DNA of 15,910 nt, taken from positions 1-15,910 of the forward strand of contig NW_021825260.1 in the NCBI RefSeq assembly GCF_006345805.1, written 5' to 3'. Below are positions 3,984-15,910 of this stretch, in pieces. The notes beneath the pieces were generated by a model, which did not search any database, was not told the origin of the DNA, and saw only the letters and a list, made by a program, of their open reading frames with translations. The stretch comes from Octopus sinensis. Its lineage: Eukaryota. The translations under genes and the position numbers were made by a program. Numbering within the stretch: position 1 is the first letter of the stretch; every line of letters begins with the position of its first letter.

Positions 3984-5025
3984 TAAACATATGGTATGTA
4001 AACAAATGTAAACAAAACAATAACGATGACATTTTTTACTCGGTGTATGTGTATATGTATGAATGTATGTATGAATGTATGTATGTATGTGTGTATGTAT
4101 CTATGTATGTGTGTGTGTATGTGTGTGTATGTATGTGTGTGTATGTATGTATGTATGTATGTATGTATGTATGGCCGATTCGGTGTTTACTTTATTTCGA
4201 GTTAAAACGAAAGATTATCAAAAAAAATTTTGTTTATATCTTCGATCACTGTCATTATTCCATTGAGTCAACCTCATTATTTTTTACATAGCAAAGGTAA
4301 TCTTTCGTTTTAACTCGAAATAAAGTAAACACTGAATCAGCCATACATACATACATACACACACACATACATACATAGATACATACACACACACACACAT
4401 ACATACACACACATACATACATAGATACATACACACACACACACATACATACAGATACACATACACCGAGTATTCACTCGAAAAAACTAAACACTGAATC
4501 GGCTATACATACATACATACACACACACACATACATACACACACATACACACACATACATAGATACATACACACACACACACATGCATACATATACACAT
4601 ACACCGAGTAAAAAATTTCATCGTTTTGTTTACATTTCACATCCCATGTGTGACATACACACACACACACACATACATACATACACACACACACACATAG
4701 ATACATACACACACACATACATACACACACATACATACATAGATACATACACACACACATACATACATAAAGATACACATACACCGAGTATTCACTCGAA
4801 AAAACTAAACACCGAATCGGCCATACATACATACATACATACATACATACATACATACACACACATACATACACACACATACACACACACACACACATAC
4901 ATAGATACATACACACATACATACATACATTCATACATACATACATTCATACATATACACATACACCGAGTAAAAAATTTCATCGTTATTGTTTTGTTTA
5001 CATTTGTTTACATACCATATGTTTA
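3984..5025. repeat. Inner palindrome of the transposon: one left unit, 80-bp loop, four tandem inverted units built from TATG/TG microsatellite plus short unique spacers
   Basis: 3984-4201 is a near-perfect reverse complement of 4796-5025. 4195-4217 pairs with 4298-4320, leaving a loop at 4218-4297. Spacer ACACCGAGTATTCACTCG at about 4463 and 4781; spacer ACACCGAGTAAAAAATTTCATCGTT at 4601 and about 4963. Confidence 0.9.
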
Positions 5026-5285
5026 CTACGTCACCAAATTGGTGGTCGAGACGGAGTCAATAATATGAAGCCGAAAGACGGAATACCATTGGTTAAAATT
5101 CTAATTATTAAACAATGTTAAACTTAGAAATTACAATTCCGTTTTCATTCTGGTTTACAATTAAGTTTACTTATGACACATTCTACCAGTATACGAAGTT
5201 TCAAATTGTTTGGTTCAGTAGGAAAAATTTGAAAAAACTGGCCTCACAAATGAAAAGATCCCTTGTTCCTAGAGTAGACACAAAA

Positions 5286-5328
5286 ATTATTATTATTATT
5301 GTTGTTGTTGTTATTATTATTATCATCA

Positions 5329-5401
<73 letters not shown>
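5286..5401. repeat. (ATT)n microsatellite, i.e. (TAA)n on the minus strand
   Basis: Direct reading; a few GTT and ATC variant units. Confidence 0.97.
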
Positions 5402-5956
5402 GAGTGAGAGAGCAGTGCATGCCATCAAAGTGACACTGGGGTAAAATATGCGAAGCCCAATATACCCATCATGACTACCCGTCTGATAAGGGTACACCAG
5501 GCACATGCATCACAACCATATGTGCGCGACATGGTGATCTCATATCAAGATAAACAACGCATGACCTTGCAGGTGGGGCCCAGTTAGAATTTTCTTCAGG
5601 TTGAGTAGCCCATCCCGCTCAAAAGGTCCCTGAATAAGGGTTGTTTAAGGATGTTGAAAGAACCACCCATGTTTCCAGAGGTGAAATATTCAAACCCCAA
5701 AGAATCCCTCTCAACACATGGCTATGATGCTCCCCCACTACTTCTGCTCGTGATCAGAGATGCACATATCGTCAGTCACTAAGGGACATGCTCAACTGGT
5801 CATGGTCAAACAACTGACAAGCAAATTTGTTGTATTGAGCAGAATATTTGCTGTAGCCCATCTTTTATACCAAGACAAAACAATGTACATGATAACACTT
5901 CCAATCAGTTAAGATCAGAAGCCATGTGAGCCACTGCCTGGTCTCTGCATCAGGGC
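5402..5956 (-). mobile_element. Element X copy 1: 555-bp unclassified non-coding repeat bounded by (TAA)n on both sides (longest copy)
   Basis: The same sequence recurs at 6818, 12905 and 15740 with an identical left boundary ATT|GAGTGAG. Strand is inferred from the constant left end and variable right end. No credible ORF. Confidence 0.85.
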
Positions 5957-5975
5957 ATTATTATTATTATTATTA

Positions 5976-6068
<93 letters not shown>
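5957..6068. repeat. (ATT)n microsatellite
   Basis: Direct reading. Confidence 0.97.
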
Positions 6069-6071
<3 letters not shown>

Positions 6072-6748
6072 TAGTTTTTTATTTTTATAGCGTGCTTTCA
6101 CTTCACTACCGAGCGCAGCTCTATGTGCCTTGGGTATGTGCTGTGATTTGTTCTGATGCTCTGATGGTTATTGTATGGAAAGTGTTCTGCGTAGGATGTG
6201 TGCAGTGCCTAGTAGTGCAATTTTCTGTATGTTATATGTGTTTGTAAGTCCTGGTGTTTTTGTTATGTATTTGTCTGAATATTTGTTTTATCATGCCTAA
6301 TGATAGGACTTGTTTCTGTTTTTAGATTCCACATTCTGGTTACCTCTATTTCGAGGTCTTTGTATTTTGAGAGTTTCTCCATTTCTTTTAGAGACACGTT
6401 GTCATCAGCCGGTATTGATACATCAATTAGAAAGCATTTTTTTTCTTGATGATCTCTGACAACTATATCTGGTCTGTTGGCCTTAATTTCTCTATCTGTG
6501 TGTATCGGCATATCCCAGAGCATGGTTGCTTTCTCGTTTTCTGTGACCTTTTCTGGTGTGTGCCTATACCATCTTTTTTCTGTTGTTATTCCATAATGTT
6601 GGCATAGCGTCCAATGTATGTAGGTTCCAACTCTGTTATGTCTGTGAATATATTCCTTCTTAGCCAGGACTGGGCAGCTAGAGATAATATGATTTATTGT
6701 TTCTTGTCCATCTCCACATATTCTGCAGTTACTTGTAATTTTTTTTTT
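6069..6748 (-). mobile_element. LINE A: 5'-truncated R4/Dong-clade non-LTR retrotransposon (RLE domain plus 3' UTR)
   Basis: ORF 6263..6523 ILWDMPIHTDREIKANRPDIVV...FLIDVSIP...EKLSKY carries the PD-D-K restriction-like endonuclease motif. C-terminus LLGTAHILRRTLSIQ with stop at 6168-6170. About 100-bp 3' UTR with AATAAA joins (AAT)n. An 11-bp deletion relative to LINE C shifts the frame. Confidence 0.9.
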
Positions 6749-6764
6749 ATTATTGTTATTATTA

Positions 6765-6817
<53 letters not shown>
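6749..6817. repeat. (ATT)n microsatellite
   Basis: Direct reading. Confidence 0.97.
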
Positions 6818-7237
6818 GAGTGAGAGAGCAGTTCATGCCATCAAAGTGACACTGGGGTAAAATATACGAAGCCCAATATACCTATCATGACTACCCGTCT
6901 GATAAGGGTACACCAGGCACATGCATCACAACCATATGTGCGCGACATGGTGATCTCATATCAAGATAAACAGCACATGACCTTGCATGTGGGGCCCAGT
7001 TAGAATTTTCTTCAGGTTGAGTAGCCCATCCCGCTCGAAAGGTCCCTGAATAAGGGTTGTTTAAGGATGTTGAAATAACCACCCATGTTTCCAAAGGTGA
7101 ATTATCCAAAGCCCAAAAGAATCCCTCTCAACACATGGCTATGATGCTCCCCCACTACTTCTGCTTGTGATCAGAGATGCACATATCGTCAGCCACTAAG
7201 GGACAGGCTCAACTGGTTATGGTCAAACAACTGACAA
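6818..7237 (-). mobile_element. Element X copy 2 (5'-truncated, 420 bp)
   Basis: Colinear with 5402-5820 at roughly 95% identity by eye. Similarity stops after CAACTGACAA, where LINE B sequence begins. Confidence 0.9.
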
Positions 7238-10200
7238 TAGTTTCCTTAAGATGTGCAGCTTTTTGCAAGAAATCAATCTTTCATGGGATTTCCAGTTGCC
7301 TTAAGTAGTCTTGAAGTTTCAATGGAAATGAGCCCAACGCTCTAATCACCACTGGTATCACTTTTACATTACCCTCTCGCATTCCATACAGTCTTGCCAT
7401 TTCTACTTTCAGTTCATAGTACTTGGTGATTTTTTCAACCTCTTCACTCACAACATTCATGTCATTTGGTATGGCTACATCAATGATCTGACAGTATCTA
7501 TCTCTCTTACTCAATATGACAATAACCGGCCAACAGTGTTTGATTACATGATCCGTCTGAAAATCATAGTCCCAGAGTATCGTTACTTTTCCATCCTCCT
7601 GCATAAATTTACTAGGTACATGCTCATACTAGTTCTCTCTTACTTCATATTGGTATTTATGGCATAAGATCCTGACGGTGCCTGTATTCTTTTTTTGCAT
7701 GACTCTCATATCCACTAACCAACTGGGTCATATTTTCCACACTCTTTCCACAGAGTCTGCATTTCTGGACGTCAGAAGTTTTATAGATATTATACTTCAT
7801 CGAATTGGTAGCCAGAGCCTGGGTTTGTGCAGCAATGATCAGACTTGCGGCGATACGCCTCAAATCACTTCGCTCAATCCATGCCCACGATGCTGTATTA
7901 TCCTAAACGCTTTGTGTATTCCTTTCAAACTGTCCATGCATTCCCATTTCATGGTTTTCTTTCTTTTCTCTCTCCCCAACTCTTTGGTTAAACTATGCCA
8001 TCCCCATCATTTTATCTGCATTTGCAACACCCATATGTTTCGCTGCATATTGCAGCAGGTCTTCATCACTATTTATCAAATACTCGGCAAGCGTTCTCCT
8101 TTCATTCCTTTGGTCTATACTAATTAGTCTTCTGCCACCATTCTTTCTTTTCATAGACAGTCTATTTGCGTTTGCTTTATGGTGCAGCGCCCCATGCAGG
8201 GTCATCAATTTCTCACCCTTCTATTCAGTGTTGATATTTACTTCTTAGTCCATTTCAGGATAGACGCACTATCTCTGACCACCGCAATTGCCCAGATATT
8301 CATTGCAGTAATCGAATTTTGGCACTAAGGTTGGATTTCAACACCATCTTCAGCCTTTTTTGATACGCCTCGTTGATCTTAACTTTCATTTTTCTGTGTA
8401 GAATGTCATCCAGCTCCAAAATCTCTAAATATCTATACCCACTACTGTCTGGTCCACCCACGGTCTCTCCTGATGGTAACCGCAATCCTCTGCAGGCTGG
8501 TTTCTTCCCTCTATTCATATTAAGTACTGAGCATTTGCTGATCCCAAATTCCATACCGATGTCCCTACCACATTTCTACACTGTTTTGGTTAAGGAATCT
8601 ATCTACTTTTCAAAGTTCCCAAACCATTTCAGGTCACCCATAAACAGCTGATGGTTCAATGATGGGCCTTTTTTCCCACATCGTTAACCTATCTTAACTT
8701 TCTTAAGTGTTATTATTATGGGTATTAGTGTAATTACAAAAAGTAACGGAGAAAACGAGTCACCTTGGAAGATTACCCTTTTAATATTAACTTCTCTAAG
8801 GAATACATTACTTGAATACTATTTGGTTTTCCACTCTTTGATACTATGCATTAGAAAATTTGTGATGTTGTCAGCAACACCAAACATCTGCAGGCATTCA
8901 ACGATCCAAGAATGAGACATCATATCAAATGCCTTCTTAAAGCCAATCCAAGCCATTGATATGTTTGTATGTTGTTTTTTACAATGCCTCAAAACTGCTT
9001 TATCGATGACTAGGTGATCCTTGGCACCCTGAGAACTCTTCCTACATCCTTTTTGTTCCTTTGGTAGTATTTCTTCCTGTGCCGGGAAGGTGTATATCTC
9101 TGCCGCACATATTCCAGTGAGTATCTTCCAGATTATGTTTAGGCATGCTATGGGACGGTAGTTTCCCACAGTATTCTCCTTTCTTCTGTCTTTCATTACA
9201 AGTGATGTCCTCCCAGTCACCATCCACGCGGGGACTGTACCTTTCTGTACACATTCATTCAATTGGACTGCTAGTCTTTCATGCACCGTGTGGTATCTCG
9301 TGTGGTATCTCTTCAGCCAGAAGCCATGAATCCGATCTGGTCCGGGGTATTTCCAGTTAGCCACTTTACCCACTTTACCCGTGCTTATGACAATATTCCC
9401 TTCTTTCTTTCCTCCTTGTAATTCTGTCTTGATAGTTCCTATCCACATTGCAGCCCTTTTATGCACCACATTGTTTCCCCATAATCCGCTCCAGAACTCC
9501 TTGGCTTCATTTGCATCAGGAGCAACATTTTCCTCTCTGTCTCCTAACGTTCGGAAGAATTGCTTCGGGTTATTTTTGAATAAACTGTTCTCGAATCTTC
9601 TGATCTTCTGGCTCTTTAATCATGATCCTCTGTTTTAACTACATCAAACCAATTCTTCCGTATTTTATGTTTCTTCTCTAATTTTTCTCGGTCGCTTTTT
9701 TTCCCATTTTTCCAGTTTCCTCTTAACCACTGCTCAATTTTTCCTAGATCTTGCCTTGCCTGCATTATGTCCCTTTCCATGCGTCGTTTCCACCATGATT
9801 CTTTTGCTCCACCATTTTTTATTCACTTAAGTTGTAATTTCTCCTCAACAAGTTGCGTAATAGCTCGGAGAATATTCCCTGTTTGTGTTATGTTCTCCGT
9901 CTGGATGTATGGTATGACAGTATTTAACTTTTGTGTTACATTATTTATCATACTCCTATATACTCTTCTCATATTCATGGAGCTTTTTTTCTTCTGGAGC
10001 ATTCAGTCTGTGAGTCGTCTTTGAATTTCAAGCAATTCATTATCTAGTTGGTTCATTTCCCCTGCATGTCTACCCACGACAGTGTCTGGGTTCACTGTAT
10101 AACGTTCCAGTTCCTCATCCTTAACAGCCCCATCACTATTCCCCTGTTCCTCCTCTACTCTTCTCCCTGCTTTCAACTCCGACCATCCTTTGTATCCCAT

Positions 10201-10590
10201 CCTAGATATTTCTACTTCAATTAAGTAACTCTTCCTTCTAATCACTCTCACTTGGTTCATCAGTTTATTTTCTGACATTGAACACATGTCCTTTTCCATC
10301 CAAATTTCAAGGTAAGTCGGCCTACTCTGCGACTTCTTTCCAGCTTTGCTCTTCCATGACATTCAGTTAGTGTATCGTACTCTTCCTTCGTCTACTTCTG
10401 TTTTTGCGCACACCGTGTATGTGATCTGTAGTGACATACCGACTGCCCGAGGCCAGATCACTGCCCCTCATGCGGGTGGTTTCGGACGTGCCATGATCGG
10501 CTATACCTTTATTCTCGGCGTTAATTCTTCCTTGTTGTGTTGCATCATGATTTCATGTGTCGTTCGTGGGGTTCCCACGAGTGTTGTTAT
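7238..10590 (-). mobile_element. LINE B: nearly full-length but decayed R4/Dong-clade non-LTR retrotransposon lacking its 3' UTR
   Basis: Minus-strand order: N-terminal IWMEK...SENKLMNQVRVIRRK (10003..10362); NPKQFF...EFWSGLW; RT motifs YPGPDRIHGFWLK, NYRPIACL, EQKGC, WIGFKKAFD, IFQGDSFSP, FMGDLK (8633-8644), MEFGISKC; knuckle CRLCGK (7657..7863); RLE ILWDY...WPVIV...IDVAIPND...VIRALG (7281..7604). Multiple stops and frameshifts; 5' boundary approximate. Confidence 0.92.
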
Positions 10591-10703
10591 TGATATCTCA
10601 TCTCTCTCTTCCACTCTTTATTTGTATACACATGTGCTCATGTATGTACATACACATATATATATAAATATTTTACTTGCATTGTGTCACCTCCATAAAC
10701 ACA

Positions 10704-10704
<1 letters not shown>

Positions 10705-10781
<77 letters not shown>
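10705..10781. repeat. (ATT)n microsatellite (3' tail/target of LINE C)
   Basis: Direct reading; near-perfect run. Confidence 0.97.
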
Positions 10782-10784
<3 letters not shown>

Positions 10785-12817
10785 TAGTTTTATTTTTATA
10801 GTGTGCTTTCACTTCACTACCGAGCGCAGCTCTGTGTGCCTTGGGTATGTGCTGTGATTTGTTGTGATGCTCTGATGGTTATTGTATGGAAAGTGTTCTG
10901 CATAGGATGTGTGCAGTGCCTAGTAGTGCAATTTTCTGTATGTTATATGTGTTTGTAAGTCCTGGTGTGTTTTGTTATGTATTTTTCTGAATATTTTTTT
11001 ATCATGCCTAATGCACCTACTATGATAGGAATTGTTTCTGTTTTTAGATTCCACATTCTGGTTACCTCTATTTCGAGGTCTTTGTATTGAGAGTTTCTCC
11101 ATTTCTTTTAGAGACACGTTGTGTCATCAGCCGGTATTGATACATCAATTAGAAAACATTTTTTTCTTCATGATCTCTGACAACTATATCTGGTCTATTG
11201 GCCTTAATTTCTCTATCTCTGTGTATCGGCATATCCCAGAGTATGTTTGCTTTCTCGTTTTCTGTGACCTTTTCTGGTGTGTGCCTATACCATCTTTTTT
11301 CTGTTGTTATTCCATAATGTTGGCATAGCTTCCAATGTATGTAGGTTCCAACTCTGTCATGTCTGTGAATATATTCCTTCTTAGCCAGGACTGGGCAGCC
11401 AGAGATAAAATGATTTATTGTTGCTTGTCCATCACCACATATTCTGCAGTTACTTGTTATATTTCTTTTCATTACATGTTTTTGGTAATTTCTGGTGGGG
11501 AGGCTTTGGTCTTGTGCTGCAATTAAAAATCCCTCGGTCTCTGCTTTGAGTCCTGAGCTTCTCAACCATTGCTGGGATTTTTCTATGTCTATTTCTTTTG
11601 CATTTAGTTTTGTCCAGTATTTGCCATGAAGGGGCTTTTCTTGCCATCGTTTTATCATGGTTCGTTGCTGTTCTATTTTTAGTTTGGATTTCATTTGTTT
11701 TATAGCTTTTGTTGTTTTCTTCTTCTTCTTCTTCTTCTTTTTCTTCTTCTTCTTCTCTTCTTCTTCTTCTCTTCTTCTTCTTCTCTTCTTCTTCTTCTTC
11801 TTCTTCTTTTCTTCTTCTTCTTCTTCTTCTTCTTCTTCTTCTCTTCTTAACATTTGTTAGGTGGTATGATTTTTTGTTTGTATTTGTCAGCTTCCTTAAA
11901 TACTGAGAACAGTTTTTTGTTTTGCTCGTGTTTTTGCCGCTATCTGGATCAGTTTCCTTCCTTCTGAAGTAGATATTTTTGCAGTCCTATGGTGGTTATT
12001 TCATAGTAGTTTTCCAGCTGTATAAGACCTCTACCACCATCTATACCTTGTATATATAGCCTTTCTATGTCAGATTTTTGGTGATGCATCCTAGATCCGG
12101 TCATCATTTTTCTTGTTTTCCTATCTATTTTGGTCAGTTCATTTCGTGTCCAGTTAAGAATATTGTAGCTGTAACTTATAACTGGGACAGCTAAAGTGTT
12201 AATACCTATTATCTTGTTTTTAGCATTGAGCTCTGATTTTAGTATTGATCTAACTCGTCTATAATATTCTTTTTTTATTTTCTCTGTCATTTGTGTGTGT
12301 TGTATCTTATCTAGTTCATGGATTCCTAAGTATTTGTAAGTTTGGCTTTGGTCTAATTCTTTTAGTTCATTGGTTTTATCTAGTGTGATGTTGCTACTCT
12401 TAATTAGTTTTCCTCTTTTCAGGGTTACTTTGGTGCATTTTTCTAATCAAAATTTCATATCTATTTCTTTGGTAAATCCATGAACTGTCTTTAATAGTGT
12501 TTCCAGCTGTTTGTCATTTGTAGCGTATAGTTTTAGGTCATCCATATATAAAAGGTGGCTGATCTTTTTGGCGTAACATTTATATCCGCATCTAGTTCTG
12601 TTTAGCATACCAGATAGAAGGTGACAGTCCCAAGCAGAAAAGGAGTGAAGAGAGCGAGTCTCCCTGGAATATTCCTCTTCTAATGGGGATGGCTTTGGTT
12701 TTCATGAGTCCCTCTTTTGTTTGGAGCTGTAGCACTGTTTGCCATTTATTTATAGAGTGTCCTATGTACTTTATAATTGTTAGTGCAACTTTGTTCATGG
12801 TTAGTGTTTCGAGAACC

Positions 12818-12818: not shown

Positions 12819-12855
<37 letters not shown>

Positions 12856-12904
12856 TATTATTATTATTATCATCATCATCATTATTATTATTATTATTAT
12901 TATT
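12819..12904. repeat. (ATT)n microsatellite with (ATC) interruptions
   Basis: Direct reading. Confidence 0.97.
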
Positions 12905-13271
12905 GAGTGAGCGAGCAGAGCATGCCATCAAAGTGACACTGGGGTAAAATATACGAAGCCCAATATACCCATCATGACTACCCGTCTGATAAAGGTACAC
13001 CGGGCACATGCATCACAACCATATGTGCGCGACATGGTGATCTCATATCAAGATAAACAGCACATGACCTTGCAGGTGGGGCCCAGTTAGAATTTTCTTC
13101 AGGTTGAGTAGCCCATCCCGCTCAAACGGTCCCTGAATAAGGGTTGTTTAAGGATGTTGAAAGAACCACCCATGTTTCCAGAGGTGAACTATTCAAACCC
13201 CAAAGAATCCCTCTCAACACATGGCTATGATGCTCCCCCACTACTTCTGCTCGTGATCAGAGATGCACATA
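12905..13271 (-). mobile_element. Element X copy 3 (5'-truncated, 367 bp)
   Basis: Colinear with 5402-5768. Similarity ends after AGATGCACATA. Confidence 0.9.
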
Positions 13272-13614
13272 CGCTCTTGCATTGTTTCTTTTGTGCTCTA
13301 TAATCACATTTCATTTCTTTATTTCAACAGTAAGGTTAGTATTTAATACATATTCTCTATCACAACCTCTGGTTCGTGTTTATACCACATTTCTACTGCT
13401 TTGGCACAAACACTCGTCTAACAAACCAACACATTCTTTTATTAACGCAACCATGCATGTACTTATACTCTTTTTGCGCTAGTTTCTACATTCACACCAA
13501 AAATTGTAAATACGTTGTCGCCTTTTCAAGAGATTCTGCGTTTGCTCTCAGACTGGAATATTATCAATCTTGTCTTTATCAGATTCGTCCTGGCGGCAGG
13601 TTCCTGAGCGGATC
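13272..13614 (-). pseudogene. LINE D: degenerate R4/Dong-type fragment (knuckle-to-RLE linker)
   Basis: Manual minus-strand translation gives VPKAVEMWYKHEPEVVIEN and IEHKR, homologous to KRWYRHTPEKVTEN...IKANRPD in LINE C. Many stops. (ATT)n begins immediately at 13615. Confidence 0.6.
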
Positions 13615-13650
13615 ATTATTATTATTATTATTCATATAATAATATATATA

Positions 13651-14000
13651 TGATTCCAAAAGGTAGTTGCTGCAAATAGTAGCAGTGAGATATGGTTATG
13701 GTTGCAGAAAGGAAGGCTGAAAAAGGAGACGAAAAGTTTCTTAGTAGCAACACAAGATCAAACACTAAGGACTAATTGAGTAGAAGCCAAGATAAACAAA
13801 AACCAAGTAGATTCCCGATGTAGGTTATACAGCTCAAAAGAGTAAGTAAATGTAGCATGCTGGCAGAAAAAAAAGAAGAAAAAATACAAGAAAAGACATG
13901 ACAACCTAAGGAGTGTAATCCACAGGGAGTTATGTAGAAAGCTAGGATTTGATCATACTGATAAATGGTATGAACATCAACCTAGTAATGTACTAGAAAG
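13651..14000 (+). repeat. 350-bp inverted duplicate of LINE E positions 14456-14804
   Basis: Base-by-base reverse complement with about 8 differences. The inserted block is bracketed by the direct repeat ATTATTATTATTCATATA (13621-13638, 14022-14039) and a perfect 26-bp inverted repeat (13637-13662, 14003-14028). Confidence 0.92.
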
Positions 14001-14033
14001 CACTTTTGGAATCATATATATATTATTATTATT

Positions 14034-15545
14034 CATATACACACAACAGATTAGGCTGCTGGAAAAGAATACTTCCTAACACAGGGCTACAAGTTATCTT
14101 AGATGTTAAGAACCCTCCTAAGTATCCTAGCTGTCCCTAATAACATTGTTTTCTAGAGATGTACTGAACTGGGTTTTATGCTTGTTTCCGGTATCCACCT
14201 GTTCAATATACCTATAACTACTGGGATACATTTTACCTGCACTTTCCATAGTCTCTGTAATTCAATGGCTACGTCCTGGTACTTTGCTATTGCTTCTGTA
14301 CTTCTCGTATTGCTTTTCTCCATCATTTGAGACAGTAAAGTCAATTATCTGGCACTTTCTATTCTCTTTGTCTACTGCTACCAAATCAGGCCTTCTAGTT
14401 TCTATTACTCTGACAGTCAGAATGTTAAAGTCCCACAACATCTCGTATTTTTTTACTTTCTAGTACATTACTAGGTTGATGTTCATACCATTTATCAGTA
14501 TGATCAAATCCTAGCTTTCTACCTAACTCCCTGTGGATTGCTCTCCTTAGGTTGTCTTGTCTTTTCTTGTATTTTTTCTTCTTTTTTTGTGCCAGCATGC
14601 TACATTTACTTACTCTTTTGAGCTGTATAACCTACATCGGGAATCTACTTGGTTTTTGTTTATCTTGGCTTCTACTCAATTAGTCCTTAGTGTTTGATCT
14701 TGTGTTGCTACTAAGAAACTTTCCGTCTCCTTTTTTAGCCTTCCTTTCTGCAACCATAACCATATCTCACTGCTACTATTTGCAGCAACTACCTTTTGGA
14801 ATCAACAATGCGAAGCCTTCTCCTGCCAGTCAGATAACTTTTGTTATTTTTCTGGTTTTTAATTTCGCTTGGCTTTTTGGTTTTCCTATGTCTTACTGCG
14901 ACTCAGGCAGCTCTTAATAAACTTTCTTTACTATTACCTACATAGGAGTTTATATCTACTCTAGCTAACTCCATGCAGTCTTGTACTAATATTAACCCTC
15001 TTCCACTTTCCTTCGTAGGTAAGTATAATCTTGTTACACGTGATCTTGGGTGGGGGTCCTCCATTCATATTGAATTCCTTCCTAATTATTCTGTCTAGAA
15101 TTGCTAATTCAGTTTTCCTCCAATCTACAAAAGCTACTGAATATCTAAGTGATGATACCGCCAAAGTATTTACAGCCTTCATTAGATTCGGACCATTTCA
15201 CTTTGACTTCAAGAGCTTCCGCTCCCTTCTAATGTACTCTTTCTCAATTTTCGTTTTTATTTCTATAGTTAGTATTCTGTCAGATTCTAATTCTCCTAAA
15301 TACTTATAACTCTCTCCTCCTTTCAATGATTTTAATGTCAGGCCATCTGGTAATTGGAAGCCTTCACTGTTGGCTACCTGTTCCCTTCTTATGACTAATA
15401 TTGCACACTTATCTATGCCAAATTCCATACCTATATCTTTACTGAAGAGTTTTACAGTCTGTATTGAGGAATCAGTCTTTTTTCATTCTTGATAAAAAGC
15501 TTCAGATCATCCATTTTTCTTCTTATTTCTTCAAATTTTCTTCCA
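14034..15545 (-). mobile_element. LINE E: 5'-truncated, decayed R4/Dong-clade element of a further family
   Basis: MDDLKLF (about 15495-15515), MEFGIDKC...YKYLG (15198..15428), AVNTLAV...W (14961..15182), FLVATQDQTLRTN, WYEHQP, RLE tail IELQRLWKVQVKCIPVVIG (14153..14344). C-terminus LLGTARILRRVLNI with stop at 14099-14101. 65-bp 3' UTR ending GTATATG|AAT, unlike the LINE A/C UTR. 5' boundary approximate. Confidence 0.88.
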
Positions 15546-15712
15546 TTTCTCGCCGAGTGTTTTCCGTACATCTACGGCAGAGAAGTTCATTCCCAGATTA
15601 CGCACGCAAATTCACAGGTAAAAGATGTATTTAAAAATTAATAAATAAATAAATTCATGAATGGTTGTTGCTTTCACAGCGATAATGCACTTGTCAGTAC
15701 ATGAGTCGTTCC

Positions 15713-15739
15713 ATTACTATTATTATTATTATTATTATT
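15713..15739. repeat. (ATT)n microsatellite
   Basis: Direct reading. Confidence 0.9.
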
Positions 15740-15910
15740 GAGTGAGAGAGCAGTGCATGCCATCAAAGTGACACTGGGGTAAAATATACGAAGCCCAATA
15801 TACCCATCATGACTACCCGTCTGATAAGGGTACACCAGGCACATGCATCACAACCATATGTGCGCGACATGGTGATATCATATCAAGATAAACACCACAT
15901 GACCTTGCAG
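15740..15910 (-). mobile_element. Element X copy 4 (runs off the window edge)
   Basis: Colinear with 5402-5572; same ATT|GAGTGAGAGAGC boundary. Confidence 0.9.

What the first reader, a model, noticed from the sequence alone, without database searches (positions are those of the whole stretch)
5402..5956. Element X: a non-coding element that behaves like a TAA-targeted retroposon but has no recognisable SINE head
Seen: four copies (5402, 6818, 12905, 15740), roughly 95% alike, share the same left end on (ATT)n. The right ends differ (555, 420 and 367 bp; the fourth is cut by the window). No convincing ORF, no A+B box pair, no TIRs, and no visible similarity to the 3' UTRs of LINEs A/C or E. 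Known: a fixed 3' end with variable 5' truncation is the signature of target-primed reverse transcription, and Dong-type R4-clade elements target TAA repeats. Inference: X is either a non-autonomous parasite of a TAA-specific RLE LINE or the unusually long 3' UTR of a further family. A site-specific, non-tRNA partner of R4/Dong would be unusual.
Basis: partly seen in the sequence, partly recalled or inferred. Interest (0 to 1): 0.78.

Follow-up and report, generated by a model that had tools for sequence, protein, structure and literature searches.

The report
Structured 3' end of TAA-targeting LINE
Element X is most likely the last eight codons plus a 390-base, strongly folded 3' untranslated region of a TAA-repeat-targeting, R2-like (Dong-type) LINE retrotransposon, seen once still joined to its LINE body and otherwise as short truncated copies; this is an ordinary pattern, except that one copy carries an unexplained 136-base head.

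Summary
The four copies are real. They lie on the minus strand, are 96-98% identical, and all end ...CTCTCTCACTC(AAT)n, with different 5' ends. X has no tRNA, 5S or 7SL head, no A/B boxes and no long ORF.

Copy X2 (6818-7237) is not a separate insertion next to LINE E. LINE E's reading frame runs in phase across 7238/7237 and stops 8 codons later at 7211-7209 with ...CLTITS*. That is the ending (L[ST][ILVM]x0-3*) of 81 of 97 complete homologues. So X positions 137-555 are the ORF end plus a 390-nt 3' UTR of LINE E.

LINE E carries an RT, a CCHC finger and a PD..D..K nuclease that match solved R2 proteins. The sense RNA of this UTR is unusually stable (z = -4.5; antisense +0.4), which fits an RT-binding 3' UTR of the R2 kind. 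X3 and X4 are 5'-truncated copies.

X1 alone has 136 extra 5' bases. They are unrelated to LINE E, non-coding, and fold into a 101-nt hairpin from base 1. This could be the head of a SIDE-like parasite or unrelated sequence, and one copy cannot decide. No copy of X outside the window could be retrieved.

Verdict: an ordinary LINE 3' end of a known kind, low interest.

The parts
5286..5401 (-). (AAT)n tail/target array 3' of X1
   Evidence: TRF period 3, 39 copies; sequence read
5402..5791 (-). X1: 390-nt 3' UTR module (X positions 166-555)
   Evidence: Shared at 96-98% with X2, X3 and X4. The sense RNA (5402-5793 was the stretch folded, i.e. the UTR plus 2 bases of the stop codon) folds at -141.7 kcal/mol, z = -4.53; antisense z = +0.37
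5792..5820 (-). X1: remnant of the last 8 codons (VSCLTMTS) plus stop TGA (5794-5792)
   Evidence: Same frame and sequence as the LINE E/X2 ORF end
5821..5956 (-). X1-only 136-nt head: non-coding, first 101 nt form one hairpin; it is unresolved whether it belongs to X
   Evidence: No nucleotide similarity to LINE E upstream of 7238 or to anything else in the window. No tblastn hit from 120 homologues. Hairpin 5856-5956 has z = -3.24, antisense +0.14
5957..6068 (-). (AAT)n: 5' flank of X1 and tail of the LINE A copy
6069..6737 (-). LINE A, 5'-truncated copy: CCHC + RLE end, own 194-nt 3' UTR ending ACTACTG(AAT)n
   Evidence: tblastn 87% to P0001. Relatives L001 and L002 have the same tail. 3' UTR fold z = -0.13
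6738..6817 (-). A10 run plus (AAT)n: tail of LINE E/X2
6818..7208 (-). X2: 3' UTR of LINE E
   Evidence: 96% identical to X1; follows the stop codon at 7211-7209
7209..7237 (-). X2: last 8 codons VSCLTITS plus stop, in frame with LINE E
   Evidence: Homologue alignments run through 7237 to 7212-7230 and reach the homologues' last residues. The ending motif is found in 81 of 97 homologues; background is 7e-4 per codon
7238..10704 (-). LINE E body: decayed ORF with N-terminal region, RT, CCHC finger and PD..D..K nuclease
   Evidence: RVT_1 E = 2e-9; frame map; tblastn to homologues; profile hit to R2 proteins in the PDB
10705..10781 (-). (AAT)n: 5' flank of LINE E and tail of LINE A'
   Evidence: TRF 25.7 copies, 100% matches
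12819..12904 (-). (AAT)n tail of X3
12905..13271 (-). X3: 5'-truncated copy (X positions 189-555), abutting an unrelated, 3'-truncated old LINE fragment with no TAA between them
15713..15739 (-). short (AAT)n tail of X4
15740..15910 (-). X4: copy cut by the window end (X positions 385-555)

Best explanation
X (positions 137-555) is the native 3' end of an autonomous, TAA-microsatellite-specific LINE of the restriction-like-endonuclease (R2/R4/Dong) type. LINE E in this window is a copy of that LINE. The module consists of the last 8 codons, the stop codon, a 390-nt 3' UTR and an (AAT)n tail.

Inferred mechanism, by analogy with R2 and Dong. The LINE protein binds the folded 3' UTR of its own transcript and nicks a (TAA)n tract. 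It then primes reverse transcription from the nick on the RNA's (UAA)n end. Reverse transcription often stops early, so most copies are 5'-truncated and dead on arrival. Each new tail is itself a TAA tract, so later elements land in earlier tails and build a same-orientation chain.

Shown here:
- The copies and their shared 3' end.
- In-frame continuity of LINE E into X2.
- The RLE-type domain set of LINE E.
- The strand-specific stability of the UTR RNA.
- TAA tracts on both flanks of X1 and of LINE E/X2.

Inferred:
- RT binding to the UTR.
- Priming on TAA.
- That the short copies came from LINE E-family transcripts.
For: 1. Homologue alignments to LINE E cross 7238/7237 without a frame change and end at the homologues' own C-termini. 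Examples: P0083 residues 230-380 of 381, P0023 216-364 of 364, P0047 181-331 of 331, P0090 102-252 of 252.
2. The frame stops at 7211-7209 after ...CLTITS. Of 97 complete homologues, 81 end L[ST][ILVM]x0-3*. That motif occurs at 7e-4 per codon in the six-frame translation of the window.
3. LINE E has RVT_1. A profile of the family's C-termini matches solved R2 proteins 9nl3_A, 9dou_A and 9nl2_A at E = 2e-6 to 2e-5, over the CCHC finger and the PD..D..K region.
4. The three measurable 5' ends all differ: one copy attached to the LINE, one at position 1 and one at position 189.
5. The sense-strand UTR RNA folds with z = -4.53 and the antisense with z = +0.37.
6. There is a chain of same-orientation elements, each following the (AAT)n tail of the previous one.
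7. Another LINE in the window starts at its last 11 codons right after X4's tail. Extreme 5' truncation of LINE 3' ends is therefore common in this locus.
8. Dong inserts in TAA repeats (PMC3774820).
Against: - Only one copy (X2) is attached to a LINE body, and no copies outside the window could be obtained.
- The well-conserved ...LLGTAxILRK... motif is only partly recognisable in LINE E (AAHLKETI). The alignment of the last dozen residues is therefore ambiguous. Under the alternative alignment, the LTITS* match would be a coincidence.
- X3 shows that a 5'-truncated X can end up next to an unrelated 3'-truncated LINE with no TAA in between. An accidental juxtaposition at 7237/7238 is therefore not impossible.
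- X1's first 136 nt are unrelated to LINE E and non-coding, which a simple truncated LINE E copy does not explain.
Confidence: 0.65

Rival explanations
1. X is a distinct non-autonomous, non-Pol-III retroposon, a SIDE-like parasite. Its full length is 555 nt: a 136-nt hairpin head plus a 3' module copied from the LINE E family, which lets it borrow that LINE's protein. X1 is a full-length copy and X3/X4 are truncated copies. LINE E merely shares the tail.
For: - X1's head begins exactly at the (AAT)n boundary. Its first 101 nt form one hairpin closed by bases 1-4 and 98-101, with z = -3.24 on the sense strand only.
- The head is non-coding and unrelated to LINE E, while the next 419 nt are 96% identical to LINE E's end.
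- R2 SIDEs have this two-module layout: a 5' processing module plus the parent's 3' UTR (PMC3774820).
Against: - The head is seen in one copy only.
- It has no Rfam hit, including the HDV-like ribozyme families, and no P1 partner inside the head.
- It does not match the 5' end of LINE E in the window.
- The hairpin window was chosen after seeing the fold; the full 136 nt give only z = -1.83.
- The head could equally be the stump of another element whose 3' part was deleted on insertion, as happened upstream of X3.
Confidence: 0.2
2. The LINE E/X2 contact is accidental. X2 is a 5'-truncated insertion whose integration deleted LINE E's true 3' UTR and last codons. X would then be the 3' UTR of a further LINE family not present in the window.
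For: - A deletion-type 5' junction exists at X3.
- No TAA units remain at 7237/7238.
- LINE E lacks a clean ILRK motif.
Against: It requires three coincidences together:
- Truncation of LINE E within 2-9 codons of its natural end.
- Joining in frame.
- A new frame that stops after 8 codons with the family's usual L[ST][ILVM]x0-3* ending, whose background is 7e-4 per codon.
Confidence: 0.1
3. X is a classical SINE with a degenerate tRNA, 5S or 7SL head.
For: - A 12-nt stretch in the head (GCAGTGGCTCAC) resembles the 5' part of 7SL/Alu. This is a resemblance from memory only.
- There are weak A-box-like matches.
Against: - ARAGORN finds nothing.
- Rfam finds nothing at gathering score or at E<=10.
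- No B box lies in X, and A-box hits are only slightly above chance over the whole window (63 found, 49 expected; 5 of 200 shuffles reach 63), the few inside X being 2-mismatch matches with no B-box partner.
- The 5' ends are not uniform.
Confidence: 0.03

Closest known systems
Dong (Bombyx mori; R4 clade of RLE-type non-LTR retrotransposons)
   Same: - One LINE with an RT followed by a CCHC finger and a restriction-like endonuclease.
- It inserts in, and is tailed by, (TAA)n.
- It gives 5'-truncated copies.
   Different: - Clade membership by RT phylogeny was not tested here.
- Dong has an HDV-like self-cleaving ribozyme at its 5' end (PMC3774820). None was detected at the 5' end of LINE E or in X1's head.
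- The 390-nt, very stable 3' UTR is a feature of this family. The co-resident LINE A family has an unstructured 194-nt UTR.
R2 3' UTR (the RNA element bound by R2 protein to start target-primed reverse transcription)
   Same: - A long, folded 3' UTR downstream of an RLE-type ORF.
- The protein's C-terminal domains are homologous to those of R2.
   Different: - No sequence or covariance-model match to the Rfam R2 element.
- The target is a microsatellite, not 28S rDNA.
- Protein binding to the UTR is inferred, not shown.
R2 SIDEs (short internally deleted elements of Drosophila R2)
   Same: If X1's head is real, the layout would match: a 5' RNA module plus the parent LINE's 3' UTR, with no coding capacity, mobilised in trans to the same target.
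   Different: - SIDE heads are the parent's ribozyme, whereas X1's head matches nothing in LINE E and no ribozyme family.
- Only one copy has the head.
Stringent-type LINE/SINE tail sharing (for example UnaL2/UnaSINE1), and the I element, which also ends in TAA repeats (PMC3747384)
   Same: A shared 3' end is the recognition handle, and a simple-repeat tail is present.
   Different: - X has no Pol III head.
- The I element is APE-type, whereas the LINEs here carry an R2-like nuclease.

Membership tests
RLE-type LINE (R2/R4/Dong/NeSL group): applies to LINE E and LINE A | Reverse transcriptase domain | tested here: met
   RVT_1 E = 2.3e-9 on 8819-9469 and 3.8e-9 on 8822-9619
RLE-type LINE (R2/R4/Dong/NeSL group) | CCHC zinc finger and PD..D..K restriction-like endonuclease C-terminal to the RT | tested here: met
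   Profile A2 hits R2 proteins 9nl3_A, 9dou_A and 9nl2_A at E = 2e-6 to 2e-5 on these two segments. zf-RVT is found by Pfam. LINE E aligns over the same region
RLE-type LINE (R2/R4/Dong/NeSL group) | No N-terminal AP-endonuclease domain | tested here: inconclusive
   No Exo_endo_phos hit in the open N-terminal segments of LINE E. However, the copy is decayed and only fragments could be scanned
Dong / R4 clade | RT groups with Dong and R4 in a phylogeny | not tested
   No named reference sequences were on hand. All three searches with the search for homologous proteins, the only protein search that shows source names, were used, and the names it returned carried no clade label
Dong / R4 clade | Insertion within (TAA)n, with a TAA-repeat 3' end | tested here: met
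   (AAT)n follows every copy. X1 and LINE E/X2 have (AAT)n on both sides. X3 lacks it at the 5' junction
Dong / R4 clade | HDV-like ribozyme at the element's 5' end (PMC3774820) | tested here: inconclusive
   No Rfam hit at E<=10 in 5250-6100 and none at gathering score in the whole window. A crude P1/P3 descriptor gave nothing usable. LINE E may be 5'-truncated
LINE 3' UTR (X as part of LINE E) | Contiguous with, and in frame after, the LINE ORF, with the stop at the family's usual place | tested here: met
   one copy only
SINE | 5' head derived from tRNA, 5S, 7SL or snRNA, with an internal Pol III promoter | tested here: not met
   ARAGORN found 0 genes. Rfam found none. No B box in X, and A-box hits are only slightly above chance over the whole window (63 found, 49 expected; 5 of 200 shuffles reach 63), the few inside X being 2-mismatch matches with no B-box partner
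SINE | Most copies share one 5' end | tested here: not met
   The three measurable 5' ends are all different. The sample is very small
SIDE-like non-autonomous derivative | 3' module identical to the parent LINE's 3' UTR | tested here: met
   X1 positions 137-555 are 96% identical to the end of LINE E
SIDE-like non-autonomous derivative | A recurrent 5' module (the parent's 5' end or ribozyme) shared by many copies | not testable with these tools
   The head is present in one copy. It has no match to LINE E's 5' region.

The most novel reading that the evidence does not exclude
X1 represents a true non-autonomous element. It would consist of a 136-nt head (a 101-nt hairpin of unknown origin, with neither a Pol III gene nor a recognisable ribozyme) fused to the 3' module of a TAA-specific Dong-type LINE. 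That would make it a SIDE-like parasite of a microsatellite-targeting RLE LINE. No such partner is known to me for the R4/Dong group; this rests on my own knowledge and on the literature searches, which found none.
Probability: 0.2. Interest if true: 0.55.

Novelty: new member of a known kind. Interest (0 to 1): 0.25.

Why it matters
For annotation, X should be merged with LINE E into one family consensus. It should not be filed as an unknown or SINE-like repeat. Otherwise copy numbers of 'unclassified' short repeats are inflated and the LINE family appears to lack a 3' end.

Biologically, the window gives a compact picture of how a TAA-specific RLE LINE builds same-orientation nested chains in its own tails. 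It also shows that two co-resident TAA-tailed families have very different 3' UTRs, one highly folded and one not. This hints at separate RNA-recognition handles that would keep the families from cross-mobilising.

Only the X1 head leaves room for something less ordinary.

Tried and rejected
- **Fetching more X copies through spurious ORFs.** The 40-aa X peptide found nothing in the 5.8-billion protein set. Exact look-ups of two window ORFs were not on record.
- **Exact X k-mers.** Three different k-mers were searched: two body k-mers in metagenome and bacterial/archaeal genome contigs, and one body and one head k-mer in viral contigs. All gave 0 hits. Six k-mers in the paper library also gave 0 hits.
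- **Close relatives of LINE E, to read their 3' UTRs.** Only 37-44% identical proteins exist in the set. The one locus fetched (L003) is a distant relative with a (GAT)n tail.
- **Organism.** It was not identified. The nearest LINE A relatives are a Logan contig from SRR7158634 (91% amino-acid identity) and a contig of GCA_024449705.1 (78%), and no paper names them. My first guess was a cephalopod, because octopus genomes are rich in Dong-R4 and unclassified SINEs (PMC13282606 and PMC9115989). This is unverified and is not used as evidence.
- **X1's head as a diverged C-terminal coding region.** There is no nucleotide similarity to LINE E (77 of 150 identities against 76.6 +/- 3.5 in shuffles) and no tblastn hit. 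The only trace is a faint 'TANILLNT' resembling the family's 'TAHILRKT' in the right frame. This reading was rejected as unsupported.
- **Covariation in the UTR fold.** The copies are too similar: 0 compensatory pairs among 87.
- **HDV-like fold by a home-made descriptor.** The descriptor was too permissive in this AT/GT-rich DNA and was run without a positive control.
- **Segmental duplication as the source of the copies.** Rejected, because the flanks differ and only X plus the simple repeat is shared.

Full report
**1. The observation**

The repeat search, a MAFFT alignment and BLASTN of X1 against the window show four copies, all on the minus strand.
- X1 is 5402-5956 (555 nt).
- X2 is 6818-7237 (X positions 137-555, 96.0% identical to X1).
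- X3 is 12905-13271 (positions 189-555, 97.5%).
- X4 is 15740-15910 (positions 385-555, 97.7%) and is cut by the window end.

Every copy ends ...CTCTCTCACTC followed by (AAT)n. In the sense orientation, the 'shared left end on (ATT)n' is therefore a shared 3' end with a TAA-type tail, and the variable 'right ends' are 5' ends. The copies share nothing beyond X and the simple repeat, so they are insertions and not a segmental duplication.

**2. What X lacks**

- ARAGORN finds no tRNA in the window.
- Rfam gives no match at gathering score anywhere. At E<=10 in 5250-6100 it gives only low-complexity artefacts against CrcZ.
- A B-box search with two mismatches finds nothing inside X. A-box-like matches are only slightly above chance over the whole window (63 found, 49 expected; 5 of 200 shuffles reach 63), and the few inside X are 2-mismatch matches with no B-box partner.
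- All six frames of X1 contain several stops.

**3. The neighbourhood**

Read on the minus strand, the window is a head-to-tail chain:

X3, (AAT)n, LINE A' (10782 to about 12800), (AAT)n, LINE E (7238-10704) + X2, (AAT)n, LINE A (6069-6737), (AAT)n, X1, (AAT)n.

Further upstream lie X4, a short (AAT)n, a LINE starting at its last 11 codons (15712-15677, TTHVLTSALSL*), and a third LINE family with a 65-nt UTR and an (AAT)3 tail near 14030-14100.

The LINEs have an RT (RVT_1). After the RT comes a C-terminal region that is conserved across many animal phyla. A profile of 27 of those C-termini matches solved R2 retrotransposon proteins (9nl3_A, 9dou_A, 9nl2_A) at E = 2e-6 to 2e-5. The match falls on the CCHC finger and the PD..D..K nuclease segment. 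These are therefore restriction-like-endonuclease LINEs that end in, and insert into, TAA repeats, which is the behaviour described for Dong (PMC3774820). Two outside relatives of LINE A (L001 and L002) have an intact ORF end, the same UTR end ...ACTACTGA and a TAA-type tail.

**4. The key point: X2 is not a separate element**

When 120 homologues are aligned to the window by tblastn, the alignments to LINE E do not stop at 7238. They continue in the same frame to 7212-7230 and reach the last residues of the homologues. Examples are P0083 230-380 of 381, P0023 216-364 of 364, P0047 181-331 of 331 and P0090 102-252 of 252.

The frame reads ...LQKAAHLKETI|VSCLTITS*, with the stop at 7211-7209, which is X positions 163-165. 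Among 97 homologues with a complete C-terminus, 81 end L[ST][ILVM] plus 0-3 residues. The same pattern occurs at 7e-4 per codon in the six-frame translation of the window. X1 has the same codons (VSCLTMTS*).

X positions 137-162 are thus the last eight codons of an RLE-LINE ORF, and positions 166-555 are its 390-nt 3' UTR. LINE E has no other 3' UTR and no tail of its own. The simplest reading is that LINE E + X2 (6818-10704, 3.9 kb) is one insertion, flanked on both sides by TAA arrays.

The alternative is that X2 was joined by accident to a LINE E that had lost its end. That needs three things together: truncation within 2-9 codons of the natural stop, an in-frame junction, and a new frame giving the family's typical ending.

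I do not regard the alternative as excluded, for two reasons.
- The conserved LLGTAxILRK motif is only partly visible in LINE E (AAHLKETI), so the alignment of the last dozen residues can be drawn in two ways.
- X3 shows that accidental contacts happen. Its 5' end abuts an unrelated, old, 3'-truncated LINE fragment (WYKHEPEVVIEN at about 13352-13402) with no TAA in between.

**5. The RNA**

The sense (minus-strand) RNA of the UTR folds at -141.7 kcal/mol against -119.0 +/- 5.0 for dinucleotide shuffles (z = -4.53; 0 of 100 shuffles as stable). The antisense strand gives z = +0.37. This strand asymmetry is what an evolved RNA fold produces and a mere base-composition effect does not. It fits a 3' UTR that serves as the handle for its own reverse transcriptase, as in R2. 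Binding itself is inferred.

The LINE A UTR is not unusually stable (z = -0.13), so the two TAA-tailed families in this locus differ in this respect. The four copies are too alike to test the fold by covariation: 0 compensatory changes in 87 pairs.

**6. The loose end: X1's head**

X1 alone continues 136 nt beyond position 137, up to the (AAT)n tail of LINE A.
- This stretch has no more identity to the corresponding part of LINE E than shuffled sequence has (77 of 150 against 76.6 +/- 3.5).
- It matches nothing else in the window.
- It gives no tblastn hit with any homologue, and it has two stops in the ORF frame.
- Its first 101 nt form a single imperfect hairpin closed by bases 1-4 and 98-101, with z = -3.24 on the sense strand and +0.14 on the antisense. 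I chose that window after seeing the fold. The whole 136 nt give z = -1.83.
- No ribozyme family matches it, and bases 1-7 have no pairing partner within the head of the kind an HDV-like fold needs.

Three readings remain:
- the head of a SIDE-like non-autonomous derivative. R2 SIDEs are a 5' processing module plus the parent's 3' UTR (PMC3774820);
- the 5' stump of another element whose 3' part was lost when a truncated X inserted, as at X3;
- extra sequence picked up by template switching.

One copy cannot separate these.

**7. What could not be done**

No copy of X from outside the window was obtainable.
- A peptide search, exact ORF look-ups, k-mer scans of three DNA collections and a scan of the paper library were all empty.
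- LINE E has only 37-44% identical relatives in the protein set.
- The organism is unknown to me. A cephalopod origin is only a guess and carries no weight here.
- Clade assignment by RT phylogeny was not done.

**8. Verdict**

- The TPRT reading is right.
- The SINE reading is excluded.

That makes the finding an ordinary part of a Dong-like LINE family: a new member of a known kind, possibly already in repeat libraries. There is roughly a one-in-five chance that X1 marks a SIDE-like parasite of a microsatellite-targeting RLE LINE, which would be moderately interesting.

Noticed in passing
window 13651-14000 and 14456-14804: There is a 97% inverted duplication of about 350 nt (I1/I4). Both arms are LINE coding fragments in opposite orientation (tblastn). 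The plus-strand arm lies between an (AAT)n/(AT)n patch at about 14011-14041 and another at about 13615-13650. It looks like a rearrangement or a twin-priming-type inversion inside the third LINE family.
   Followed up: no
window 15677-15712 (minus strand): Directly after X4's short (AAT)n tail, another LINE begins at its last 11 codons (TTHVLTSALSL*). This is an extreme 5' truncation of a different family, and it shows that very short LINE 3' ends are common in this locus.
   Followed up: partly
window 11717-11848: A (GAA)n/(TTC)n microsatellite of about 130 nt lies inside the LINE A' reading frame and is translated as a poly-E/K run. The relative in L001 has no such expansion at that place.
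   Followed up: no
window 3984-5025: There are large (TGTA)n and (CATA)n arrays forming inverted arms up to 167 nt long at 93% complementarity. A 138-nt higher-order period lies between them.
   Followed up: no
window 6738-6747: An A10 run lies between the (AAT)n tail of LINE E/X2 and the 5'-truncated start of LINE A. It may be untemplated addition at the 5' junction.
   Followed up: no
window 6069-6262 versus 5402-5791: Two co-resident TAA-tailed RLE LINE families have very different 3' UTRs. LINE A's is 194 nt with no excess stability (z = -0.13). X's is 390 nt and very stable (z = -4.5).
   Followed up: partly
L003 4500-4780: A distant relative of LINE E (37% identity) on a JGI metagenome contig ends ...ILRKVLM*. 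This is followed by a 3' UTR of about 140 nt and then a (GAC/GAT)n tail instead of TAA. Tail or target repeats therefore vary within this group.
   Followed up: partly
window 5918-5932 (minus strand, X1 head positions 20-31): GCAGTGGCTCAC resembles the 5' region of 7SL/Alu. This comes from memory only. Rfam gives no SRP match at E<=10, so it is probably chance.
   Followed up: partly
P0083 residues 261-331: The nuclease segment of a homologue weakly matches Pfam L_protein_N, a viral PD-(D/E)xK endonuclease, at E = 8e-4, below the cut-off. This is consistent with the restriction-like fold.
   Followed up: no
window 7281-7283 and 7629-7631: LINE E has in-frame stops (IP*KID and REN*YEH) and at least one frameshift near 7668, with further frame changes upstream. 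The copy is dead, which is compatible with the roughly 3% private divergence of X2.
   Followed up: partly
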